Virus record (IMG/VR): IMGVR_UViG_3300023179_005186
Span: 124,001 to 188,000 of that record
Length of the DNA: 64,000 nucleotides
Direction: 5' to 3' (one strand)
How positions within the stretch are numbered: position 1 is the stretch's first letter; each line of letters begins with the position of its first letter. This document shows, one piece after another, positions 1 to 52,586 of the stretch. The translations under genes were made by a program, and so were the position numbers. Below the pieces are notes generated by a model. That model saw only the letters and a program-made list of their open reading frames with translations, was not told where the DNA came from and did no database searches.

Positions 1-3000
1 AATAAATTAGAAGAAATAGATATTTTAAAATATAATTTACTAAAGAAAGAATATAAAATATTAAGTTTAATATTAGCTAATTTACAAATAATAATAATAG
101 AAAATGAAAATATTTTGCTTTATTCAAAAAATCAATCAATGAAATCACTAAATGAATTAATTAAGAAACTAAATGATTTATATAATAAATCATTTTTAGA
201 TATATATAATAAAGATAATGAAAATTTATTAAATAATGAATCAATGTATTCAGAAATAGGTGATATAAAATCAGAGGAAAATAAAACTAATAAATCAGTA
301 GAATCAGTAGAATCATTAGATTCTAATAATTTAGATAAATTACAAAAAGATAATGTTATTTTATCATCTGAAATATTACAAACTGTTAATATATTGGATA
401 CTAAAAATAAATCAAGTCAAGATAATTTAATAAAAAAAAGATTAAATAATAAAGAAGATTTAGAATGTAATTTAAATTTAGAAATTTTAAATGATATTAA
501 AAATATTTATTATCAAGAAGATAAATTTAATAATTATGGAAAGTATTCATATTTAGTAAATTTGATTAAATATAATCCATTTGAAGAAATTAAAAATCAA
601 ATAATACTTTTATCAAAAATAGTTGGTTTTACTTCAATAAAAGATATAATATATTTATCTTTAAATAAAAATGACTTTGTATTTGAAAAAAAAGATAAAT
701 CATTATATGAATTATTATCATCAATATTTATACCATTAGATTTTGATATATTAGATTATACAGAAAAAATAAATATTAATATTTCAAAACTAGAGTCAAC
801 AAATACTATATTATTTAATAGTCAATGTTTAATAAATTTTACAATCAATAATAAATTGTTAAAAATTAAAGGATTTATAAAAAATGATCCACTTAATATT
901 TTTTTGAGAACTTCACAAATTTCAAATAATTTTTTATATTTAAAAAAGTGTAATTTTGAAAAAATAATAAATGAAATTGATAAAGAACCATGTGATTTAA
1001 TTATAACAAGAGATACTTATAATAAATTACAAAAGATTAATAAAGAATTTGCTATAGTATATCTCAAAAATATGACAATTTGTGAAATATTAATATTAGA
1101 TTCAACACAATTTGTTTTAAAATTATATGAAGATTATAATAAATTTAATGAATTAACAAAAATACAATTTGTTAAATTAATTAAAAATTTTACAAAAGAC
1201 TCGAATGAAAATTTATCTAATATGTATAATACTATTAGATTATTATTATTAGGTACTGAAGAAAATTGTTCAGTTGCTAGTTTGTTATTTAATTTATTAA
1301 AAGATAAAAAAAGTACAAATTCAAATGAATATATTGCAAATATAATATATAATCAACTAAGTCATATATGTCAATTAAAACTTAAAAAATCAACATTTAA
1401 TATTAAAAATGAACTTGAAAAACTAAAAAGTATAACAACATCAGATATTGATTTAAAAAAACAGGTATTATTATCAAAAAATATGCCTGATCATATAAAA
1501 AAAATATGTTTAGAAAAATTAGAAGAATTAAAAAATGCAAATAATGAAACATATAAAATAAAAATGTATGTAAATATTTTAGTACAATTTCCATGGCCAT
1601 CAGATTTAGATGATAATATTTTTAGGATTGTTGGATCTGATAAAAAGAAATCAAAAGAATTTTTAGAAAATGTTGAAAATAAATTAAATTTACAAATTTT
1701 TGGTCATAAACTTGCTAAAAATAAAACTTTACAAATATTAGCTAAATTAATATCAGTACAAGGATCTCATATATCACCAATAGCATTGTCAGGACCTCCT
1801 GGTGTTGGTAAAACAAAATTTGCTCAGGTATTAGCTGATTGTCTTGATATACCTTTTGTACAAATCACATTAGGTGGTCAAAATGATGGTGAACTTTTAC
1901 ATGGTCATGGATATACATATTCAGGAGCACAACCTGGTTTAATTGTTAAAAAAATGGTTGATGCGGGATCTGCTCGTTGTATTATGTATTTTGATGAATT
2001 AGATAAATGTGTATCAAAAAATGGTCAAGTTAATGAATTAATGAGTATTTTGATACATTTAACAGATCCAATGACAAATGGTTCATTCCAAGATAGATTT
2101 TTCCAAGAGATTACTTTTCCTCTAAATAAGGTTATTTTTATGTTTAGTTTTAACGATACAAGTAAAATTGATAAGATATTATTAGATAGAATGGAAGTAC
2201 TAGATGTTGAATCATATAGTATTAAAGAAAAAATAATTATTGCAAATGATTATTTACTTAAACAGTTATGTAAAGATGTTGGTTTTGATAATAAATCTAT
2301 AGATTTTAGTGAAGAAGTATTAACAAAAATCATTGAAGATTATACATTTGAACCAGGTGTTCGTTCTCTTAAACGTTCTTTAGAAAATATTTTATTGAAA
2401 TTAAATATTGATAAAATTTATCAAAGAGGTTTATTTGAAACAAATATTGAATATTCTATTGATAATCCTATTAAAATAACATTTAATATTGCTACAGATT
2501 TTCTTGGTGAAACAAAAGTAAATTTTAAATGTATACACAGTAAAGATATGATTGGTGTAGTAAATGGATTATATGCTACTAGTTTATGTAGTGGTGGTAT
2601 TGTTCCTATACAATTAACTGCAAATCATCTAGGTAAAAATTCTAAATTTATATTAAAATTAACAGGTAATCAAAAAAAAATTATGAAAGAATCTATTTTA
2701 TATTCTTTTACAACTGCAATAAATCTTTTAACTGATGATGGTAAAGAACAATTTTTTATAAAATATCCAAATGGTATACATATACACACACCTGAAGCAG
2801 CAACTCCTAAAGATGGACCTAGTGCTGGTGTAGCTTTTACACTAGCATTTTTATCTATTATGTTAGAATTACCTATTGATAGAACAATAGCTTTAACTGG
2901 AGAAATAGATTTATATGGTAATGTAACAAAAATAGGTGGAGTAAAATATAAAGTTCAAGGTGCATTTAAAGCTGGAGTTAAAACAGTTTTTTTACCAATT

Positions 3001-3147
3001 GAAAATAAAGAAGATCTTGAAAAAACACAAAAAGATCTTCCTGAAATATTTACCCCGGATATAAAATGCTTTTTTGTTGAACATGTTTTAGAAGTAGCTG
3101 AAAAAGCATTAATTGGTTGGGATATTAAAAAAATTTTAATTAAATGA
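1..3147 (+). CDS. lon: Lon ATP-dependent protease (5' end runs off the window)
   Basis: Frame is open from base 1. Walker A GPPGVGKT, Walker B YFDELDK, EPGVRSL, catalytic Ser motif TPKDGPSAG, and Lys in GGVKYK. Confidence 0.95.
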   Translation, partial: NKLEEIDILKYNLLKKEYKILSLILANLQIIIIENENILLYSKNQSMKSLNELIKKLNDLYNKSFLDIYNKDNENLLNNESMYSEIGDIKSEENKTNKSVESVESLDSNNLDKLQKDNVILSSEILQTVNILDTKNKSSQDNLIKKRLNNKEDLECNLNLEILNDIKNIYYQEDKFNNYGKYSYLVNLIKYNPFEEIKNQIILLSKIVGFTSIKDIIYLSLNKNDFVFEKKDKSLYELLSSIFIPLDFDILDYTEKININISKLESTNTILFNSQCLINFTINNKLLKIKGFIKNDPLNIFLRTSQISNNFLYLKKCNFEKIINEIDKEPCDLIITRDTYNKLQKINKEFAIVYLKNMTICEILILDSTQFVLKLYEDYNKFNELTKIQFVKLIKNFTKDSNENLSNMYNTIRLLLLGTEENCSVASLLFNLLKDKKSTNSNEYIANIIYNQLSHICQLKLKKSTFNIKNELEKLKSITTSDIDLKKQVLLSKNMPDHIKKICLEKLEELKNANNETYKIKMYVNILVQFPWPSDLDDNIFRIVGSDKKKSKEFLENVENKLNLQIFGHKLAKNKTLQILAKLISVQGSHISPIALSGPPGVGKTKFAQVLADCLDIPFVQITLGGQNDGELLHGHGYTYSGAQPGLIVKKMVDAGSARCIMYFDELDKCVSKNGQVNELMSILIHLTDPMTNGSFQDRFFQEITFPLNKVIFMFSFNDTSKIDKILLDRMEVLDVESYSIKEKIIIANDYLLKQLCKDVGFDNKSIDFSEEVLTKIIEDYTFEPGVRSLKRSLENILLKLNIDKIYQRGLFETNIEYSIDNPIKITFNIATDFLGETKVNFKCIHSKDMIGVVNGLYATSLCSGGIVPIQLTANHLGKNSKFILKLTGNQKKIMKESILYSFTTAINLLTDDGKEQFFIKYPNGIHIHTPEAATPKDGPSAGVAFTLAFLSIMLELPIDRTIALTGEIDLYGNVTKIGGVKYKVQGAFKAGVKTVFLPIENKEDLEKTQKDLPEIFTPDIKCFFVEHVLEVAEKALIGWDIKKILIK

Positions 3148-4410
3148 ATTAAATAATTTAGCATGTTTAATAGTAAATTTTTTTAGTTCATTTATATCAT
3201 TTGGTTTAAATGATTTTTTTTCTAAATCAAATGATATAGATCCAGGACTAGTTAAATTATAATATACTATACCGTCAAATGAATATATACCAAATAGTTC
3301 TTTTGTTAATATTATTTTATAAATATCTTCATCAAATAAAAATCTATATAATTTGTTTGAATATAAAAATATAAAAAGTTTATACATATAAAAATTTATT
3401 GAATAAGCTAACTTTTTATTTTTTCCTTGATTTAATTTTTCAATTAATTTATAATTTTTAAAAATATTATTAGTTTTCATTTTGATATCATTTTTTTCAA
3501 AAATATATTTAAATATTAAAAATATTAAATGATATTCTTCTTTTGGTACTTTATTTTTATAATGTTCAAAATAAAAAAATAAACTACTAAATGGACTCCA
3601 TTTTATTCTTACAGCCCATGGTAATTTATTTTTTATTAAATAATTTGTATAATCAACATTTAAAAAATATTCATCAAATCCATAAATAAAATTTTTATAA
3701 TTTTTATAAATTGAATCTGGTATTTTTCCACCTAAATCTTTAACTTTATTTTTATAGTTTGAAAAAACTTTAAATGGATTTTTTTCCATTTTTTTCATAA
3801 AATCAATTATTACTTTATGATCAGTTTTTTTGTAACCAGAAAAACTAGATGCAACTGAATACGGATTTATATTACCATGATTTAACATTTCTAAATCAAA
3901 AATTATATTTTTTCCTAAATTTCCTCTTTTTAACATATATATTTGATCAAAATTTTTACATTTCAATACATTACTTTTATTAATATCAAAATAATGATAA
4001 TCATCAATATCACATATTATTACTAAATTTGCATCATTATTTTCAAAATCAAATAGTGGAAAAAATCTTAACATTGTTCCAAAAAATCCATAATGAAATT
4101 CTGTATTAGGTATTTGATATTCCTTACACTTATATAAAACCAATTCTATTTTTTCAAGCGAATTTATTCTACTCATTAATTGCGAATCTTTATATACAGA
4201 TTCATCAATAAATAATCTTAACGAAAAATTCATTGGATCTGAAATAACTTTTTCATATAATTTTTCTAAACCATCAATATATAAATTAAAATCCTTATGT
4301 GTCGATATAATAGCTTTAAAAAATGATGATGATACTATATTTTTTTTAATATTTGGATTAAAATTAAATAATGGTTCTAATTTACATATATTATTTGTTA
4401 AATATTCCAT
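3136..4410 (-). CDS. Hypothetical giant-virus protein (GTMLRFFPLFD...ICDID motif, possibly glycosyltransferase-like)
   Basis: 424-aa ORF with a DxD-like motif; function not established. Confidence 0.7.
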   Translation of the reverse strand: MEYLTNNICKLEPLFNFNPNIKKNIVSSSFFKAIISTHKDFNLYIDGLEKLYEKVISDPMNFSLRLFIDESVYKDSQLMSRINSLEKIELVLYKCKEYQIPNTEFHYGFFGTMLRFFPLFDFENNDANLVIICDIDDYHYFDINKSNVLKCKNFDQIYMLKRGNLGKNIIFDLEMLNHGNINPYSVASSFSGYKKTDHKVIIDFMKKMEKNPFKVFSNYKNKVKDLGGKIPDSIYKNYKNFIYGFDEYFLNVDYTNYLIKNKLPWAVRIKWSPFSSLFFYFEHYKNKVPKEEYHLIFLIFKYIFEKNDIKMKTNNIFKNYKLIEKLNQGKNKKLAYSINFYMYKLFIFLYSNKLYRFLFDEDIYKIILTKELFGIYSFDGIVYYNLTSPGSISFDLEKKSFKPNDINELKKFTIKHAKLFNSFN

Positions 4411-4460
4411 TATATTAATTCATTATATTTTAATTAAATTCTAGTTATATAAATATAAAT

Positions 4461-5999
4461 TTATAATTGAGAATATTTAAATTTTAAGTCAGCATAAGTT
4501 TGATTTAATATGAAAAATTCATTATCAATTTCTTTATCTTTATTATTAAATTCAATATTATGTTCTACTATTAATTTATTATTAATAACTAATTCATTTG
4601 TACTATCATCTAATAAACTATATATTTTATTAGCCGATTTACCCATTGTTTTTTCAACATCAATGTTAAATCTTAAAAATTTTGGTTTTAATATTTCTAA
4701 TATTTCAATATCATCTTGGTATTTTTTTATTTCAACACTTAATTTATCACAAATCTTGTCATTTGTTAATATATTTACAAACGGTTCTATCTTTTTAAAA
4801 GCTTTTGCTATTGTTACTTGTGAAACATTAAATTTATCTGCTATAATTTTTTTTTGAATATTTAATCCATTTAAATGAATCATCATATATATAGATCCTG
4901 TAGCTAAACTTAAAGGAGTATGTACTGATGCAATCTGTAATTTTTGAACATTATTTGATATTTGTATAGCTTGTTCTATAAATTCATTTTTAATTTTTAA
5001 TTCTTCACAAAATCTTGTAATAAAATGTTCAGGCTTTGTAAAATTAAATTTATAATCAATCTTTTTTAATTTTGCTAATTTTTGAAATATTTTACATCCT
5101 TTTGTTATTTCTGTATATCTTAATCCAAATAGTTCTGCTATCTCTTTGGGAGATCTTGTTTTATTTTTTTTTCTACATGCATATAAAATACATCCAGCAA
5201 TTACACTAATTCTATTCTTTCCTCTAATAATTATTGCTTTACCACTGTTTTTACCTGATATATGTTTACAATCAGATATATTTTTATACATTATTTTTGC
5301 ATCATCTTCTATACATTTTAAAATATTACCTTCAGCACATTTAGCTTGTATTATTTTGAATACATCATTTAAACTTCTTTCTTTATAAGGCATTACTGTC
5401 CATTTATGAATTGTTTTCATGCGCGATGAACAAGATATTGCTATATTTGTAGATGTTGATGATTGAGGTAATAATGTTGATATATTATGAGAACTTCTAA
5501 TATTATCTTTTTTATTATCATCATTATACTGAGTCCATTCACCATTTGTATCCATTAATGTTGATATTACTTCACCACATTTCTTACAAACAATTATCCC
5601 TTGTGATGTATCTTCAACAACATCATCATCTTTACAACTACAACAATAAAATCTTCTTTTTTCTTGCTTTATATTTAAATCATTATTTTCATATATTAAT
5701 TCAATCAAATCATTATATTTATCAAAATCTTCAATATCAATATTAACATACTCTTTTGTAAATGTTTTTTCTTTATTTTTTAATAAATTTATAGATTTTG
5801 ATATTTTTACTGATTCATATTCAGAATCTGAATCTGATTCTGAATCATCCAATTCTTCTAATTCTTCCAAATTTATAGATTCAATTTCTTCTGATACTAA
5901 TTCTAATTCCTTCAAATCTTCATAAATATCAAATTCATCATCAATTAAATCATCAATTAAATTATCATCAATTGATTTTAATTTATTTTTTTTACTCAT
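4461..5999 (-). CDS. TFIIB: Transcription initiation factor IIB with acidic N-terminal extension
   Basis: Zn ribbon CCSC...VCKKCG followed by EW; cyclin-repeat motifs YACRK, RSPKEIA, TPLSLATG, VSQVTI. Confidence 0.93.
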   Translation of the reverse strand: MSKKNKLKSIDDNLIDDLIDDEFDIYEDLKELELVSEEIESINLEELEELDDSESDSDSEYESVKISKSINLLKNKEKTFTKEYVNIDIEDFDKYNDLIELIYENNDLNIKQEKRRFYCCSCKDDDVVEDTSQGIIVCKKCGEVISTLMDTNGEWTQYNDDNKKDNIRSSHNISTLLPQSSTSTNIAISCSSRMKTIHKWTVMPYKERSLNDVFKIIQAKCAEGNILKCIEDDAKIMYKNISDCKHISGKNSGKAIIIRGKNRISVIAGCILYACRKKNKTRSPKEIAELFGLRYTEITKGCKIFQKLAKLKKIDYKFNFTKPEHFITRFCEELKIKNEFIEQAIQISNNVQKLQIASVHTPLSLATGSIYMMIHLNGLNIQKKIIADKFNVSQVTIAKAFKKIEPFVNILTNDKICDKLSVEIKKYQDDIEILEILKPKFLRFNIDVEKTMGKSANKIYSLLDDSTNELVINNKLIVEHNIEFNNKDKEIDNEFFILNQTYADLKFKYSQL

Positions 6000-23393: not shown

Positions 23394-23866
23394 TTAAAAA
23401 TGCCTAACTTCGTAAGCGAGTAAAGTTGCAGACAAAATCTGGCTAACCTAGCAAGCGAGTAAGGTTGCAGACAAAGTCAGGCTAACCTCGCAAGCGAGTA
23501 AAGTTGCAGACAAAGTCAGGCTACCGATTTTTATTATAAAATCTACTTAAAGAAATATTACAAATATATATATTTGTAATGAATAAACCTTTTTAGATTT
23601 GCTATTAATCGATAGCCTGACTTTGTCAGCAACCTGATAAATTAGGCAAATGGTTAGGTTATAAAAAAAAAGTTTATTTTCAATTTTTGATGAAAATGAT
23701 GAACTAAAAAAGATATTACTTATAATGAAAATGATTTACCAGAAGATTTAAGATATTTTACTGAACAAGCTGAACCAGCTAAAATTTAATTATTTACATT
23801 TTGATTATTTTTAATCGATTCATATATAACATATTTTATTTATAAATTCATTTTTATATAAATTAA
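23394..23866 (+). repeat. 473-bp direct repeat, copy 1
   Basis: Identical by eye to 25915-26387 (offset 2521); starts and ends with TTAA. Confidence 0.95.
23404..23523 (+). repeat. Three tandem 39-bp palindromic units (also at 25925-26044)
   Basis: Unit ctaacctcgcaagcgagtaaagttgcagacaaagtcagg; a partial inverted copy lies at 23613-23635. Confidence 0.92.
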
Positions 23867-24558
23867 GTGACATTGAAGCACCAATGATACAAACATTTCT
23901 TGATAGATTTTATAAAAACAGAACTGAAATCCGCATTTTACTTGAACAATATTTATCGCTTTTTGAAAATAATAATGATGAAAACTATTTTGGAATAATT
24001 AATTTAAAGAGTGAGCCTATTAAAATTATAAATAATATTATTAGCGATTTACAATTTATAATTAATCAAAATAGATTGGATATATTATTAGATGATATTA
24101 TAAAGGTGCATAATAATGTTAATATTAAAATACCATGTATGGAAAATTATCTTTATTATGTTATTTTTGAATTACTAAAAAATAGCACTCAAGCTGTTTT
24201 AGATAAAAGTAAAATTGAAAATAACTATAAACCATTTATTAATGTTAACATAAATAGTATTGATAGTAATTATATTCTCATAACAATAGAAGATAATGGT
24301 ATTGGTATAAAAGAAAAAAATATGGAAAAAATATGGTATTATAGTTTTACAACATCATTATTTGATTCTGAAAATATTATTGAAGAGAGTGATTTTAATA
24401 CAATAAGTCCTTTATCAGGTTTGGGATATGGATTACCAATATCTGAAATTTACATAAATTTTTTAAATTCATCTAAAAATAATATAAAAATAAATAGTGT
24501 TTACAAAAAAGGAACGACGGTTTATCTATATGTAAAATGTTATAATGAATATTTATAA
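23867..24558 (+). pseudogene. 5'-truncated pyruvate/branched-chain ketoacid dehydrogenase kinase-like gene (GHKL)
   Basis: IQTFLDRFY..R..IR.L..Q, FELLKNS, IEDNGIGI, YSFTT, LSGLGYGLPIS and GTTVY. The N-terminal helical domain is missing and the frame runs back to the repeat junction. Confidence 0.8.
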
Positions 24559-24582: not shown

Positions 24583-25719
24583 TTATTTTTCCATCATGTC
24601 TAAATATACATTTATAAGTTCTTTATAATTATTTGCATATAATAATCTTAAAAAATATTTTTCAGGAATATCTATTTTTCTCACTGAACACCATCCAAAA
24701 TATTTTTTAAATAATATTGGATGATAATATCTGAACTCTTCATTTATTTTATATAAAATATTATAAAAATAATCATAATTATTATAAAAAGTAGCTTTAG
24801 TTATTTTTTTATCAATTATTAGTTGATCAATACTTTTACTACTTTTCCTATATTTAAATATATATTGTAAATCTTTTTTATATTCTGGATATAGTTCTCC
24901 ATATTTTTCTATTGCATTTTTGAAAAATATTTCATTTTTATTCATTAGTTTCTTCATACCATTACACCATAAATTATTATTTATCCATGGTGATATCTTT
25001 TTTTTAGATTTAATACAATCTTCTATCATTTTTTCATAACTACTTAATAAACGGTATGTGCAAATAAATATTTCAGTAAAAATATGTTTATCTTTATCTA
25101 TTGAAAACATCTTTTTGTATGGATGTCTTTTATAATTTATACCAAACTTTTCATGAGTAACTTCGCCATAATCTATTGCAACACATTGAATTCCATAAAA
25201 TGGAACTTTGTAATTATTTAATGTAAAATATTTTTTTTTAGTTTTAGTTACCATTATATTTGTACCTACATGTAAATCATTATGAGAATAACCTCCGTTA
25301 TATAATATTAAAATTATTTTTATTATTTGTAATAGTATAGACAATCTTCTTTTTTTTGAAAGATTATATTTAGACTCATATTTATCTAATGTATATTTAC
25401 CACAATAATCCATTAAATATTTAACACATAATTGTGATTTTTTTGTTTTTTCTGTTTTTAATTTATCTGTAATATTTTGATAACAGTCATTATTTATTTC
25501 AAAATTATATAAATTTACAAAAAAACTTTTATCTTCATTATTTAACTTAGATATATAATTAAACAAATCAAGTTCTCTAAATATTTTATTTTTAAAACTT
25601 TTTTTTCTTTCATTGTTTAAAATATGTTCAATTTTTAATGCATATTTTTTATCTTTATATTTTACCAAATATGTTTTACCAAAAGTACCTTCACCTAATT
25701 TTTTTATAATTTTTAACAT
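24583..25719 (-). CDS. Protein kinase-like protein
   Basis: LGEGTFGKTY, ALK, HNDLH...N and IDYG. Confidence 0.85.
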   Translation of the reverse strand: MLKIIKKLGEGTFGKTYLVKYKDKKYALKIEHILNNERKKSFKNKIFRELDLFNYISKLNNEDKSFFVNLYNFEINNDCYQNITDKLKTEKTKKSQLCVKYLMDYCGKYTLDKYESKYNLSKKRRLSILLQIIKIILILYNGGYSHNDLHVGTNIMVTKTKKKYFTLNNYKVPFYGIQCVAIDYGEVTHEKFGINYKRHPYKKMFSIDKDKHIFTEIFICTYRLLSSYEKMIEDCIKSKKKISPWINNNLWCNGMKKLMNKNEIFFKNAIEKYGELYPEYKKDLQYIFKYRKSSKSIDQLIIDKKITKATFYNNYDYFYNILYKINEEFRYYHPILFKKYFGWCSVRKIDIPEKYFLRLLYANNYKELINVYLDMMEK

Positions 25720-25796: not shown

Positions 25797-25928
25797 ATGT
25801 CATTTTACCATGAAATTATAGATAATTTATATTTAGGAAGTGTTGAAGCATCAAAAGATGACGACTTTATATACAATAAAAAAATAGATGTTATTGTAAA
25901 TTGTTCAAAAGATCTTAAAAATGCCTAA
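25797..25928 (+). pseudogene. 3'-truncated dual-specificity phosphatase
   Basis: MSFYHEIIDNLYLGS...IDVIVNCSKDL, cut by repeat copy 2; no HCxxGxxR. Confidence 0.75.
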
Positions 25929-26387
25929 CTTCGTAAGCGAGTAAAGTTGCAGACAAAATCTGGCTAACCTAGCAAGCGAGTAAGGTTGCAGACAAAGTCA
26001 GGCTAACCTCGCAAGCGAGTAAAGTTGCAGACAAAGTCAGGCTACCGATTTTTATTATAAAATCTACTTAAAGAAATATTACAAATATATATATTTGTAA
26101 TGAATAAACCTTTTTAGATTTGCTATTAATCGATAGCCTGACTTTGTCAGCAACCTGATAAATTAGGCAAATGGTTAGGTTATAAAAAAAAAGTTTATTT
26201 TCAATTTTTGATGAAAATGATGAACTAAAAAAGATATTACTTATAATGAAAATGATTTACCAGAAGATTTAAGATATTTTACTGAACAAGCTGAACCAGC
26301 TAAAATTTAATTATTTACATTTTGATTATTTTTAATCGATTCATATATAACATATTTTATTTATAAATTCATTTTTATATAAATTAA
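25915..26387 (+). repeat. 473-bp direct repeat, copy 2
   Basis: Identical by eye to 23394-23866. Confidence 0.95.
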
Positions 26388-50284: not shown

Positions 50285-50548
50285 CACCCATTTACAAAAA
50301 AATGGGACAGTTTTATTTATGTTTTTTTAAAAATTCATTTGCTCTTAAAAAAGAAAGACCTTTAAAATATAAAAGGAATTATGATTTAGAAAAAGGAGAG
50401 ATAATAAAAGAAATAAAACAAAAGGTGATAACCCCTAACAAAAATGACACTACAAATCAGGGGGTCAAGTATCAACCAAGCCTATAATAGGTGCAATTAT
50501 GCCTTTAATTTACAAATTAAGAGTGTCCCACTTTTTTGTAAATGGGTG
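50285..50548. mobile_element. Element B: 264-bp MITE-like element with TA duplication
   Basis: TA|CACCCATTTACAAAAAAATGGGACA ... TGTCCCACTTTTTTGTAAATGGGTG|TA; TIRs match at 24 of 25 positions. Confidence 0.88.
50424..50523 (+). ncRNA. Candidate structured RNA (omega-RNA-like) abutting the right TIR of element B
   Basis: Stems ggtgata/tatcaacc, acccct/gggggt, gccta/taggt and ttaatt/aattaa. Confidence 0.4.
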
Positions 50549-51836: not shown

Positions 51837-51886
51837 TCTGGTCTTAAGACCATAAAATTTTAAAAATATTCATAGTTTAAGATGAT
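51837..51886 (+). repeat. 50-bp unit; intact copy of the site interrupted by element C
   Basis: 45/50 identical to 51919-51945 joined to 52505-52527. Confidence 0.85.
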
Positions 51887-51945
51887 ATTTAAGAGGATTT
51901 AGAATTTTTATTTAGATTTCTGGTCTTGAGATGATAAAGTTTTTA

Positions 51946-52502
51946 CACCTTTTCTCATTTGAAACGCCCATTTATAATAAAAAAAATTGAAACACTTTTA
52001 TTATATTGTACTATTATTACATAAAACACATTTATCTGTAAAATGTATGCCGTTGTTAGATATAACGATTATCGTAAAGAACAAGATTTTGAAATCATTG
52101 CAACTACTACTGATGTAGAATATGCTAAAAAAATAGCATTTAATAAAATCAAAGAAAACATACAAAACATGCCTGAATGTAAAAATGACGATGAACTTTA
52201 TAAAATAGAAACATATATTGAAACAGAATATTTCCAACCAATAAATAAAGAAATAATATCTTATAGAATTATCAAAGTAAAAAAGTGTAAAAACAAATTC
52301 AAAAAAATATATCATTATACAACTAAATATGCTGTTGTTGAATTTGCAGTAGGAAATTCTGAAAATTTAGAAGAAATAGATACTTCTCTCATATGTGATG
52401 ATTATATTATTGATGACGATGAATAAAAAGCAAATAAAAATGGAGGGAAACCTCTTTTTTTATTTACTCCCATAATGTGGGCGTTTTAAATGAGAAAATG
52501 TG
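51946..52502. mobile_element. Element C: 557-bp TIR element carrying one cargo gene
   Basis: TA|CACCTTTTCTCATTTGAAACGCCCA ... TGGGCGTTTTAAATGAGAAAATGTG|TA; TIRs match at 23 of 25 positions. Confidence 0.9.
52043..52426 (+). CDS. Hypothetical cargo protein of element C
   Basis: 127 aa; own AAAATTGA at 51983-51990 and a 3' hairpin gagg-gaaa-cctc. Confidence 0.8.
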   Translation: MYAVVRYNDYRKEQDFEIIATTTDVEYAKKIAFNKIKENIQNMPECKNDDELYKIETYIETEYFQPINKEIISYRIIKVKKCKNKFKKIYHYTTKYAVVEFAVGNSENLEEIDTSLICDDYIIDDDE

Positions 52503-52586
52503 TAAAATATTCATAGTTTAAGATGATTTTAATAAGTATAAATTTTTTTTTTAATATAATAAGAATATACAAATATATATAGTATA

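What the first reader, a model, noticed from the sequence alone, without database searches (positions are those of the whole stretch)
51837..52527. Element C: a self-contained one-gene cassette whose empty target site is preserved next door
Seen: removing 51946-52502 plus one TA rebuilds a 50-bp unit that is exactly the length of, and 45/50 identical to, the intact unit at 51837-51886. This internal control fixes the insertion boundaries and is consistent with a TA duplication. Between the TIRs lie an AAAATTGA early promoter (51983), a 127-aa unknown ORF and a 3' hairpin (aaataaaaa..gagg-gaaa-cctc..tttttattt), i.e. a complete viral expression unit. Inference: this is a portable cassette, and the cargo may be host-interaction or defence related.
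Basis: partly seen in the sequence, partly recalled or inferred. Interest (0 to 1): 0.78.

Follow-up and report, generated by a model that had tools for sequence, protein, structure and literature searches.

The report
One-gene transposon cassette, giant virus
A 557-base mobile element in an uncultivated lake giant virus has the inverted-repeat ends of a known mariner-type virus transposon but carries one complete small gene of unknown function in place of a transposase, and many sister elements carry other single genes, so these viruses may pass whole genes around this way.

Summary
Window 51946-52502 is a 557-bp element with 25-bp terminal inverted repeats (23/25), flanked by TA on both sides. 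It splits a 50-bp unit whose intact paralogue (45/50) lies 82 bp upstream.

It is a non-autonomous member of the Tc1/mariner family that Bao & Jurka (2013) described in Phaeocystis globosa virus (PGv-1: transposase plus Fanzor1). Autonomous copies with the same ends occur in other giant-virus contigs. A diverged 6-kb autonomous relative lies in this genome, outside the window.

Seventeen near-identical copies (82-98% aa) sit in other contigs. Similarity ends exactly at the repeats, the flanks differ, and most copies keep the repeats.

The cargo is a real, conserved 127-aa gene with an AAAATTGA promoter at -60 and a 3' hairpin. No sequence or fold search gave it a function.

The pattern is general. 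Of 60 paired elements elsewhere, about 30 hold one unrelated ORF each (methyltransferases, DUF3431, orphan ORFs). One holds a tRNA, and some are bare 44-bp repeat pairs.

The closest analogue is the bacterial mobile insertion cassette. I rate it a new variant of a known kind. Transposition and expression are inferred, not shown.

The parts
51946..52502 (+). Element C: a 557-bp non-autonomous mariner-type cassette (repeat, promoter, ORF, hairpin, repeat)
   Evidence: Similarity to 17 other contigs begins and ends at these boundaries.
51946..51970 (+). Left terminal inverted repeat, 25 bp, one mismatch to the family consensus CACCTTTTCTCATTTAAAACGCCCA
52478..52502 (-). Right terminal inverted repeat, 25 bp, one mismatch to the consensus
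51944..51945 (.). TA, left copy of the presumed target-site duplication
   Evidence: T-A at the two flank positions next to the repeat in 113 and 112 of 114 family ends.
52503..52504 (.). TA, right copy of the presumed target-site duplication
51983..51990 (+). AAAATTGA promoter-like octamer, 60 nt before the ATG. It is conserved in all aligned copies.
   Evidence: In this genome the motif peaks at -60 to -41 of ORFs.
52043..52426 (+). Cargo gene: a 127-aa conserved alpha/beta protein with an acidic tail, function unknown
52429..52468 (+). 3' hairpin directly after the stop codon, presumably a 3'-end formation signal
   Evidence: Conserved in copies.
51837..51886 (.). Intact paralogous copy of the 50-bp target unit (the 'empty site next door')
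   Evidence: 45/50; families D1, D6
51919..51945 (.). Left half of the interrupted target unit
52503..52527 (.). Right half of the interrupted target unit
50285..50548 (.). Sister element of a second repeat family (CACCCATTTACAAAAAAATGGGACA). It is a 264-bp internal-deletion derivative of a 4.1-kb transposase plus Fanzor1 element at genome 279917-284001.

Best explanation
Element C is a non-autonomous, cargo-carrying member of the PGv-1-type Tc1/mariner (DD34E, Pfam DDE_3) transposon family of giant viruses.

Its two 25-bp terminal inverted repeats are presumably the binding and cleavage sites of the family's 338-aa transposase, supplied in trans. The source could be an autonomous copy elsewhere in the genome or in a co-infecting virus inside the same virus factory. 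The enzyme would cut the element out and paste it into a T-rich TTTAAA-like site, duplicating the central TA.

Between the repeats lies a complete viral transcription unit: an AAAATTGA promoter, a 127-aa ORF and a hairpin. Wherever the element lands, the gene should be expressed on the virus's own schedule. The protein belongs to a small family of stand-alone proteins found only in metagenomic sequences, some on contigs of giant-virus size. Its function is unknown.

Shown: the anatomy, the shared ends with autonomous elements, different insertion sites in different viruses, conservation of the ORF, and the generality of one-gene cassettes. Inferred: trans-mobilisation by the transposase, TA duplication as the mechanism, transcription, and how the cargo was captured.
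For: Anatomy and internal empty-site control.

Same-family ends in this genome: E1 at 130-727, E3 at 223110-223598, and the 6-kb E4 at 290429-296492. E4 has an intact 338-aa DDE_3 transposase and a 664-aa Fanzor1.

Autonomous elements L030 (3761 bp) and L090 (4460 bp) have perfect consensus repeats. They encode a transposase 70-72% identical to E4's, with invariant D157, D238 and E272.

Their Fanzor matches PGv-1 of Phaeocystis globosa virus almost residue for residue over the part shown (PMC3627910). PGv-1 is 4442 bp with a 29-bp repeat and a TA duplication.

Seventeen copies of element C lie in other contigs. Similarity is confined to 175944-176513 of the genome, and the flanks diverge exactly at TTA|CACC and GGTG|TAA.

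Flanks of 114 family ends: A at the position next to the repeat in 112, T at the next position out in 113, T at the third position out in 110.

An orthologous empty site with a single dinucleotide exists for the sister 4.1-kb element in L014-L017.

The ORF is intact in 12 of 13 full copies, all indels are in frame, and dN/dS is about 0.42-0.47. There are 130 homologue clusters at 90% identity and 92 at 50%. The structure model is confident, pLDDT 87.

Lake metagenome contigs confirm both junctions. Element depth is 5-100 times flank depth, so it is multi-copy in the community.
Against: No autonomous copy with exactly C-type repeats lies in the 316-kb contig (CheckV estimates 28% completeness). 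E4's left repeat differs from element C's left repeat at 6 of 25 positions, so cross-mobilisation by E4 is uncertain.

No empty-site allele of this locus was seen among the listed read joints. No orthologous locus was found in IMG/VR. The only empty-site evidence for this insertion is therefore the neighbouring paralogue.

Transposition has not been observed. dN/dS is only moderately below 1. Transcription is not shown: the metatranscriptome signal cannot be separated from DNA carry-over.
Confidence: 0.85

Rival explanations
1. The gene moves by homologous recombination or nuclease-triggered homing, not by transposase cut-and-paste. The repeats, present at many sites, would act as portable homology, or Fanzor1 cuts at empty sites would drive copying.
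For: Repeats and 44-bp repeat-only mini-elements are abundant and could provide homology. Fanzor1 genes with invariant D-E-D residues travel in the same family. Giant-virus factories are recombination-rich (general knowledge).
Against: The duplicated TA and the T-T-TA-A-A target pattern at 110-113 of 114 ends are the signature of DDE mariner integration, not of recombination. Element C keeps only the 25-bp repeats and none of the Fanzor-side subterminal sequence that would encode a guide RNA. Its insertion sites share no homology beyond TA.
Confidence: 0.07
2. Ordinary deletion-derivative MITE: the interior is decayed transposon sequence and the 127-aa ORF is a chance or remnant frame.
For: The sister element at window 50285-50548 is exactly that kind of derivative. 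Three short elements elsewhere hold truncated transposase ORFs.
Against: The interior of element C has no similarity to E4, to the 4.1-kb element, or to E1 and E3 beyond 40-60 bp at the ends. The ORF is conserved with in-frame indels and dN/dS below 1. Homologues at 45-54% identity exist as genes without repeats in other contigs up to 116 kb. AlphaFold gives a confident fold.
Confidence: 0.02
3. Resident gene with regulatory palindromes: the inverted repeats are shared promoter or terminator structures, and the apparent insertion is a local rearrangement of a tandem repeat.
For: The locus is a tandem ~82-bp duplication rich in palindromes. Hairpins are common 3' signals in such viruses (general knowledge).
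Against: The same repeats bound transposase- and Fanzor-encoding elements. Copies sit in unrelated contexts. Repeat-only 44-bp units flanked by TA exist.
Confidence: 0.02
4. Assembly artefact: the left and right flanks were joined through a repeated element and do not belong together.
For: Short-read contigs break at the repeats and none spans the whole element. The element is multi-copy in the sample.
Against: The two flanks are the two halves of one 50-bp unit that matches the neighbouring unit at 45/50, which a chimeric join would not produce. Both junctions recur in independent runs.
Confidence: 0.03

Closest known systems
[quoted passage not shown]
   Same: TA duplication, ~25-29-bp terminal repeats and a Mariner-type transposase. 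The Fanzor1 of the repeat-sharing autonomous elements matches PGv-1's over the part shown, and E4's Fanzor matches the HMa-1 fragment. That paper already noted that these elements share ends and transposase but differ in the other genes they carry.
   Different: Those are autonomous, 4-kb-class, single-copy elements. Element C has no transposase and no Fanzor, is 557 bp, and carries one unrelated gene. I could not compare PGv-1's repeat sequence directly, because its DNA was not in the held supplement.
Bacterial mobile insertion cassettes (MIC231 of Bacillus cereus and others; PMC3913671, PMC3129680)
   Same: Inverted repeats of an insertion-sequence family bracket passenger genes. There is no transposase, a target duplication is present, and mobilisation is in trans by the cognate transposase. 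Functionally this is the best analogue.
   Different: Different transposase family (IS4/IS231 versus Tc1/mariner) and a bacterial host. Trans-mobilisation is shown experimentally for MIC231 and not here. Here the cassette brings a eukaryotic-virus promoter and hairpin.
Submariner MITEs of Pandoravirus salinus and other viral MITEs (PMC4495683, PMC6004678)
   Same: Non-autonomous Tc1/mariner derivatives with TA duplication inside a giant-virus genome.
   Different: Those MITEs are 116-422 bp and are defined as lacking coding capacity, and the putative autonomous partners reported for Submariner lie in Acanthamoeba genomes. Element C carries a complete gene, and its partners are virus-borne.
Pack-MULEs and other Pack-type repeat-bounded elements of plants (general knowledge)
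   Same: Non-autonomous elements whose interior was replaced by captured host sequence.
   Different: Pack elements usually carry gene fragments or chimeras. Here the cargo is a whole gene with its own signals, and one cargo is a tRNA.
Integron gene cassettes (general knowledge)
   Same: One-gene mobile units drawn from a very diverse, mostly unknown gene pool.
   Different: Integron cassettes are promoterless, end in attC, and are moved by a tyrosine recombinase into one attI site. Here movement is presumably by a DDE transposase into many TA sites.

Membership tests
Tc1/mariner (IS630-Tc1-mariner) superfamily, non-autonomous member | TA target-site duplication | tested here: met
   TA on both sides, and one TA in the paralogous empty unit. 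TA at 112-113 of 114 family ends. An orthologous empty site with one dinucleotide exists for the sister element. The sequence alone cannot exclude insertion without duplication between T and A.
Tc1/mariner (IS630-Tc1-mariner) superfamily, non-autonomous member | Terminal inverted repeats shared with an autonomous element that encodes the transposase | tested here: met
   L030 and L090 have the consensus repeat, which differs by 1 nt from each end of element C, and encode a 338-aa DDE_3 protein.
Tc1/mariner (IS630-Tc1-mariner) superfamily, non-autonomous member | Partner transposase with HTH DNA-binding domains and a DD(E/D) triad | tested here: met
   Pfam DDE_3 at 2e-15 and 7e-19, plus HTH_28, HTH_32 and HTH_Tnp_IS630. 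D157, D238 and E272 are invariant, with 34 residues from the second D to E.
Tc1/mariner (IS630-Tc1-mariner) superfamily, non-autonomous member | Actual excision and integration by that transposase | not testable with these tools
   Supported only indirectly, by different insertion sites in different contigs.
MITE in the strict sense | No coding capacity | tested here: not met
   The 127-aa ORF is conserved and intact. Element C should therefore not be filed as a MITE. The definition is quoted in PMC6004678.
MITE in the strict sense | Small size, terminal repeats, target duplication, no transposase | tested here: met
   557 bp, 25-bp repeats, TA, no transposase.
Mobile insertion cassette (functional class) | Inverted repeats bracket passenger gene(s), no transposase gene inside, target duplication present | tested here: met
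   Definition in PMC3913671.
Mobile insertion cassette (functional class) | Mobilised in trans by the cognate transposase | not testable with these tools
   Needs a transposition assay.
Fanzor1 (for the partner elements, not for element C) | Homology to solved Fanzor1 and a conserved RuvC D-E-D triad | tested here: met
   The profile of 12 proteins hits Spizellomyces Fanzor1 (8gkh) at E = 6e-62. D407, E578 and D634 are invariant.
Fanzor1 (for the partner elements, not for element C) | Guide RNA encoded at the element end | not tested
   Not examined. Element C lacks the Fanzor-side subterminal sequence.

The most novel reading that the evidence does not exclude
The PGv-1-type mariner repeat pair serves giant viruses as a general gene-cassette vehicle. 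Almost any single, promoter-equipped gene (orphan ORFs, methyltransferases, even a tRNA) can sit between two 25-bp repeats. The cassette is moved in trans among loci and among co-infecting viruses, and some cassettes later lose their repeats and become resident genes. This would be a eukaryotic-virus counterpart of bacterial mobile insertion cassettes or integron cassettes, and a concrete route for the spread of orphan genes in giant-virus pangenomes.
Probability: 0.5. Interest if true: 0.78.

Novelty: new variant of a known kind. Interest (0 to 1): 0.62.

Why it matters
Giant-virus genomes are full of orphan genes with patchy distribution, and how these genes move is largely unexplained. Transposons in these viruses have been described as rare, low-copy autonomous elements or as non-coding MITEs.

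Here a described mariner/Fanzor1 family shows a large set of derivatives, each carrying one complete, self-expressing gene. The same cassette is found in unrelated genomic contexts in many lake viruses. Older copies appear to have lost their repeats and settled.

If trans-mobilisation is confirmed, this is a simple, testable mechanism for gene exchange and gene fixation between giant viruses. A 25-bp repeat pair plus a 338-aa transposase could also become a tool for inserting genes into giant-virus genomes in culture.

Tried and rejected
Function of the cargo. All searches gave nothing usable:
- Pfam.
- Foldseek against PDB (best TM 0.2).
- AlphaFold DB clusters (best an uncharacterised protein, TM 0.51).
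- BFVD (uncharacterised klosneuvirus proteins, E about 1e-3).
- VIA-align wide (best Z 4.9).
- ESM Atlas (scores below 0.9).
- Profile search of 1.84 billion representatives: only small stand-alone relatives, never fused to a known domain.

Orthologous empty site for this locus. The downstream 267-aa gene has no relative in IMG/VR. The ClpP-like gene has relatives only at 43% identity or less. The records behind L011-L021 are not held for whole-record search.

Population polymorphism. Contig-level read laying showed both junctions but no joint from 51945 to 52503 among those listed. Contigs drop rare variants, so this is not evidence of absence.

Transcription. In metatranscriptome X1, body depth is about 85-100 times flank depth, against 20-26 times in DNA run X3 from the same study. 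Intergenic flanks are also covered in X1, so DNA carry-over cannot be excluded. I treat this as a hint only.

tRNA cassette. ARAGORN missed it. Rfam found it at 50.2 bits.

An error-tolerant regex for the boundaries timed out and was replaced by BLAST plus MAFFT.

How the cargo was captured is unresolved. Copies of the L009 type have a complete ~67-bp mini-element followed by TA in front of the promoter. That fits capture of a gene lying between two mini-element insertions. A nested insertion followed by deletion would give the same picture, and so would template switching during gap repair.

Literature searches found no description of gene-carrying non-autonomous elements in giant viruses. 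The library is incomplete, so this is not proof of novelty.

Full report
**Setting.** The window is bases 124001-188000 of a 315,722-bp IMG/VR virus record. The record is 20% G+C and CheckV estimates it as 28% complete. The octamer AAAATTGA lies 41-60 nt upstream of 28 ORFs of at least 150 aa, where chance expects about 3% of ORFs to have it anywhere within 150 nt. This is the positional promoter signal known from Mimiviridae (general knowledge). The runs that hold the sequence are lake and freshwater metagenomes.

**1. The observation**

- The element is 51946-52502, 557 bp.
- Its ends are 25-bp inverted repeats matching at 23/25, with TA outside each end.
- Deleting the element and one TA rebuilds a 50-bp unit that matches 51837-51886 at 45/50. 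The binomial chance is about 1e-16.
- AAAATTGA starts at 51983, 60 nt before the ATG of a 127-aa ORF (52043-52426).
- A hairpin follows the stop codon directly (-14.1 kcal/mol, z = -4.1).

Two cautions apply. In such AT-rich DNA a 23/25 inverted repeat is not by itself striking (1 of 100 shuffles); its weight comes from its recurrence. The sequence also cannot distinguish a TA duplication from an insertion between T and A without duplication.

**2. What it is**

*Same family in the same genome.* The repeat recurs in the contig:
- E1, genome 130-727, 598 bp.
- E3, genome 223110-223598, 489 bp.
- E4, genome 290429-296492, 6064 bp, with a variant repeat CACCTTTGCACATTTAAAAYGCYGA.

All are flanked by TA. 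E4 encodes three things:
- an intact 338-aa protein with Pfam DDE_3 and HTH domains;
- a 664-aa protein that is a Fanzor1;
- an N-terminally truncated eIF2-gamma-like ORF.

The Fanzor1 assignment rests on a profile of 12 such proteins. It hits the solved Spizellomyces Fanzor1 at E = 6e-62, and the RuvC D, E and D residues are invariant.

*A second family.* A second family has the repeat CACCCATTTACAAAAAAATGGGACA.
- Its long copy is 4.1 kb (genome 279917-284001). It carries a transposase 35% identical to E4's and a Fanzor 30-33% identical to E4's.
- Its short copy is 264 bp and lies inside the window at 50285-50548. This copy is a plain internal-deletion derivative of the long one.

*Element C is different.* Its interior shares nothing with any of these elements beyond 40-60 bp at the ends.

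*Same family in other viruses.* An exact 21-nt repeat pattern hits more than 118 stretches of giant-virus contigs in IMG/VR. Pairing the ends gives 60 elements, nearly all flanked by TTA...TAA. By content they fall into classes:
- 3.7-4.5 kb: 338-aa transposase plus a 624-661-aa Fanzor1 (L030, L090). The repeats are perfect consensus. The transposases are 70-72% identical to E4's, with invariant D157, D238 and E272, which is a DD34E arrangement.
- 2.2-2.4 kb: Fanzor1 plus an ~85-97-aa ORF (10 elements), or Fanzor1 alone (1 element), without a transposase.
- About 30 elements of 325-1612 bp, each holding one ORF that nearly fills it. The ORFs fall into at least 25 BLASTP-unrelated groups.
- A 202-bp cassette holding a tRNA, anticodon UUU (Rfam 50.2 bits, E = 4e-10).
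- Non-coding elements of 88-295 bp, and 44-bp units that are just the two repeats back to back, still flanked by TA.

I scanned 20 of these ORFs with Pfam. Matches were an FkbM methyltransferase, a Methyltransf_24 protein, DUF3431, and a CoiA_N-like protein that also occurs as the middle gene of L090. Most had no match. Three short elements hold truncated transposase ORFs and are ordinary deletion derivatives.

*Target preference.* Across 114 ends, counting outward from the repeat:

| Flank position | Base | Ends |
|---|---|---|
| 1st | A | 112 of 114 |
| 2nd | T | 113 of 114 |
| 3rd | T | 110 of 114 |
| 4th and 5th | T | about 75% |

T makes up only 35% of the sequence. The preferred target is therefore T-T-T-[TA]-A-A-A.

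*Link to the literature.* Bao & Jurka (2013, PMC3627910) described PGv-1 in Phaeocystis globosa virus 12T:
- 4442 bp, a 29-bp repeat and a TA duplication;
- a Mariner transposase, a GIY-YIG nuclease and a 625-aa Fanzor1.

[quoted passage not shown] The autonomous family is therefore known, and that paper already noted that its members share ends and transposase but differ in their other genes.

**3. Does element C move?**

It fails.
- The 127-aa protein has 17 loci in IMG/VR at 82-98% identity.
- BLASTN of those loci against the whole 316-kb contig matches only 175944-176513, which is the element.
- In the multiple alignment the flanks diverge exactly at TTA|CACC and GGTG|TAA, and I count at least nine different contexts.
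- Most copies keep both or one repeat.
- In L014-L017 the copy lies beside the orthologue of genome 278904-279909, about 100 kb from its position here. In L019 it lies beside the orthologue of 219834-220412.
- The flanks of the other loci tested have no orthologue above 43% aa identity anywhere in the contig, although the elements are 86-97% identical in DNA.

The L014-L017 loci also carry the orthologous empty site of the 4.1-kb sister element, with a single dinucleotide where this genome has TA-element-TA.

Lake metagenome contigs give three further points:
- They reproduce both junctions of element C (X1 record 4, X2 records 11 and 16, X3 record 18).
- Element depth is 5-100 times that of the flanks, and depth in the bin that holds the left repeat is 200-5000, so the element is multi-copy in the community.
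- No empty allele of this locus appeared among the listed joints.

**4. Is the cargo a gene?**

- The ORF is intact in 12 of 13 full-length copies. One lineage has an 11-codon duplication and an early stop.
- All indels are multiples of three.
- Pairwise dN/dS has a median of 0.42.
- The promoter octamer and the hairpin are conserved in every copy.
- The family has 130 clusters at 90% identity, down to 41% identity, and 92 clusters at 50% identity. All are 201 aa or shorter and none is fused to a known domain.
- AlphaFold2 on a 37-sequence alignment gives a confident model (pLDDT 87). The strand and helix order is beta-beta-alpha-beta-beta-beta, followed by an acidic tail.
- No fold or sequence search gives a function.

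More distant homologues show progressive loss of the ends:
- L154 (74-76% identical) keeps subterminal sequence but no repeat.
- L145, L155 and L156 (51-58%) have eroded repeats.
- L146 and L159 (45-54%) have none and sit tightly among ordinary virus genes.

Either cassettes settle and lose their ends, or these are the resident ancestors from which the cargo was captured. I cannot tell which.

**5. How it most likely works**

The most likely mechanism is trans-mobilisation by the family's DD34E transposase, acting on the 25-bp repeats, with cut-and-paste into T-rich TA sites. This rests on:
- the shared ends with autonomous elements;
- the TA signature;
- the multiple insertion sites.

It is an inference. 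I give it 0.85.

The transposase source is open. E4's left repeat differs from element C's left repeat at 6 of 25 positions. No C-type autonomous copy lies in the sequenced 28% of the genome. A co-infecting virus could also supply the enzyme.

The cassette brings its own promoter at the standard distance and its own hairpin. AAAATTGA occurs inside the element upstream of the cargo in 10 of 32 cassettes, where about 0.6 would be expected by chance.

How cargo enters is unresolved. L009-type copies carry a complete ~67-bp mini-element plus TA in front of the promoter. That fits capture of a gene lying between two mini-elements, but other histories give the same structure.

**6. Comparison and novelty**

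Element C meets the tested features of a non-autonomous Tc1/mariner element. It fails the 'no coding capacity' criterion of a MITE. Functionally it matches the bacterial mobile insertion cassette.

Already known:
- the autonomous family (2013);
- Fanzor1-Mariner association (PMC10530073);
- non-coding mariner MITEs in Pandoravirus (PMC4495683, PMC6004678).

I found no description of the numerous gene-carrying, transposase-less derivatives, including a tRNA cassette and bare repeat pairs. The library searched is incomplete.

**Caveats of the survey.**
- Loci were selected by an exact 21-nt repeat match, which biases towards intact ends.
- Ends were paired by proximity.
- ORFs are simple ATG-to-stop calls.
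- Some loci may be the same region from related assemblies (for example L137 and L139).

**Verdict.** The finding is real and the 'portable cassette' inference is right. The element is a new variant (a mobile-insertion-cassette-like, one-gene derivative) of a known giant-virus mariner/Fanzor1 family. The cargo's function is unknown.

Noticed in passing
window 50285-50548: A 264-bp element of a second repeat family (CACCCATTTACAAAAAAATGGGACA, TA-flanked). It is an internal-deletion derivative of a 4.1-kb transposase + zinc-finger + Fanzor1 element at genome 279917-284001. Its 61-aa ORF is the C-terminal remnant of that Fanzor.
   Followed up: yes
L007:2001-8064 (genome 290429-296492, outside the window): A 6-kb autonomous mariner/Fanzor1 element (E4) that also carries an eIF2-gamma/EF-Tu-like ORF. 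That ORF lacks the P-loop and has stop codons upstream, so a translation-factor pseudogene is riding in a transposon.
   Followed up: partly
L137:1424-1625 and L139:11772-11973: A 202-bp cassette with the same repeats whose only content is a tRNA gene, anticodon UUU (Rfam 50.2 bits). ARAGORN did not call it. It lies next to a 427-bp cassette holding a 107-aa ORF.
   Followed up: partly
L091:2201-2244, L124:2119-2162, L142:6160-6203: 44-bp 'empty' elements: the two repeats back to back form a palindrome, still flanked by TA. Contig joints 51972>52478 and 51973>52484 in run X2 look like the same kind of unit.
   Followed up: partly
L014-L017, around position 1901-1908 of each locus: The orthologous empty site of the 4.1-kb sister element. 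Sequences flanking genome 279916 and 284002 are contiguous in four related contigs, with one dinucleotide where this genome has TA-element-TA.
   Followed up: yes
window 23394-23693 and 25915-26214: A 300-nt perfect direct repeat flanks a 2.2-kb segment. The segment holds a PDK/BCKDK-like HATPase ORF (23884-24558) and a protein-kinase-like ORF (24583-25719, minus strand). It could be a recent duplication, another mobile unit or an assembly effect.
   Followed up: no
window 51837-52557: The target of element C is itself an ~82-bp tandem duplication in the ClpP-like/267-aa intergenic region. Each copy starts with the palindrome GGTCTTAAGACC or a diverged form of it.
   Followed up: no
L003:110-673 (genome 110-673, contig start): In element E1 the 187-aa cargo ORF reads through the degenerate left repeat (5 mismatches) and ends 20 nt outside the element. 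The contig itself starts 130 nt before this element, which suggests the assembly broke at the repeat.
   Followed up: no
L009:2869-2940, L021:2867-2940: In some copies of element C the left end is a complete ~67-bp mini-element (repeat ... inverted repeat at 15/18) followed by TA and then the promoter. This hints that the gene became mobile by lying between two mini-elements.
   Followed up: partly
window 51922-52297, run X1: In a lake metatranscriptome the 5' half of the cargo region has 85-100 times the depth of the flanks. A DNA run of the same study shows 20-26 times. This is a possible sign of transcription, but DNA carry-over is not excluded.
   Followed up: partly
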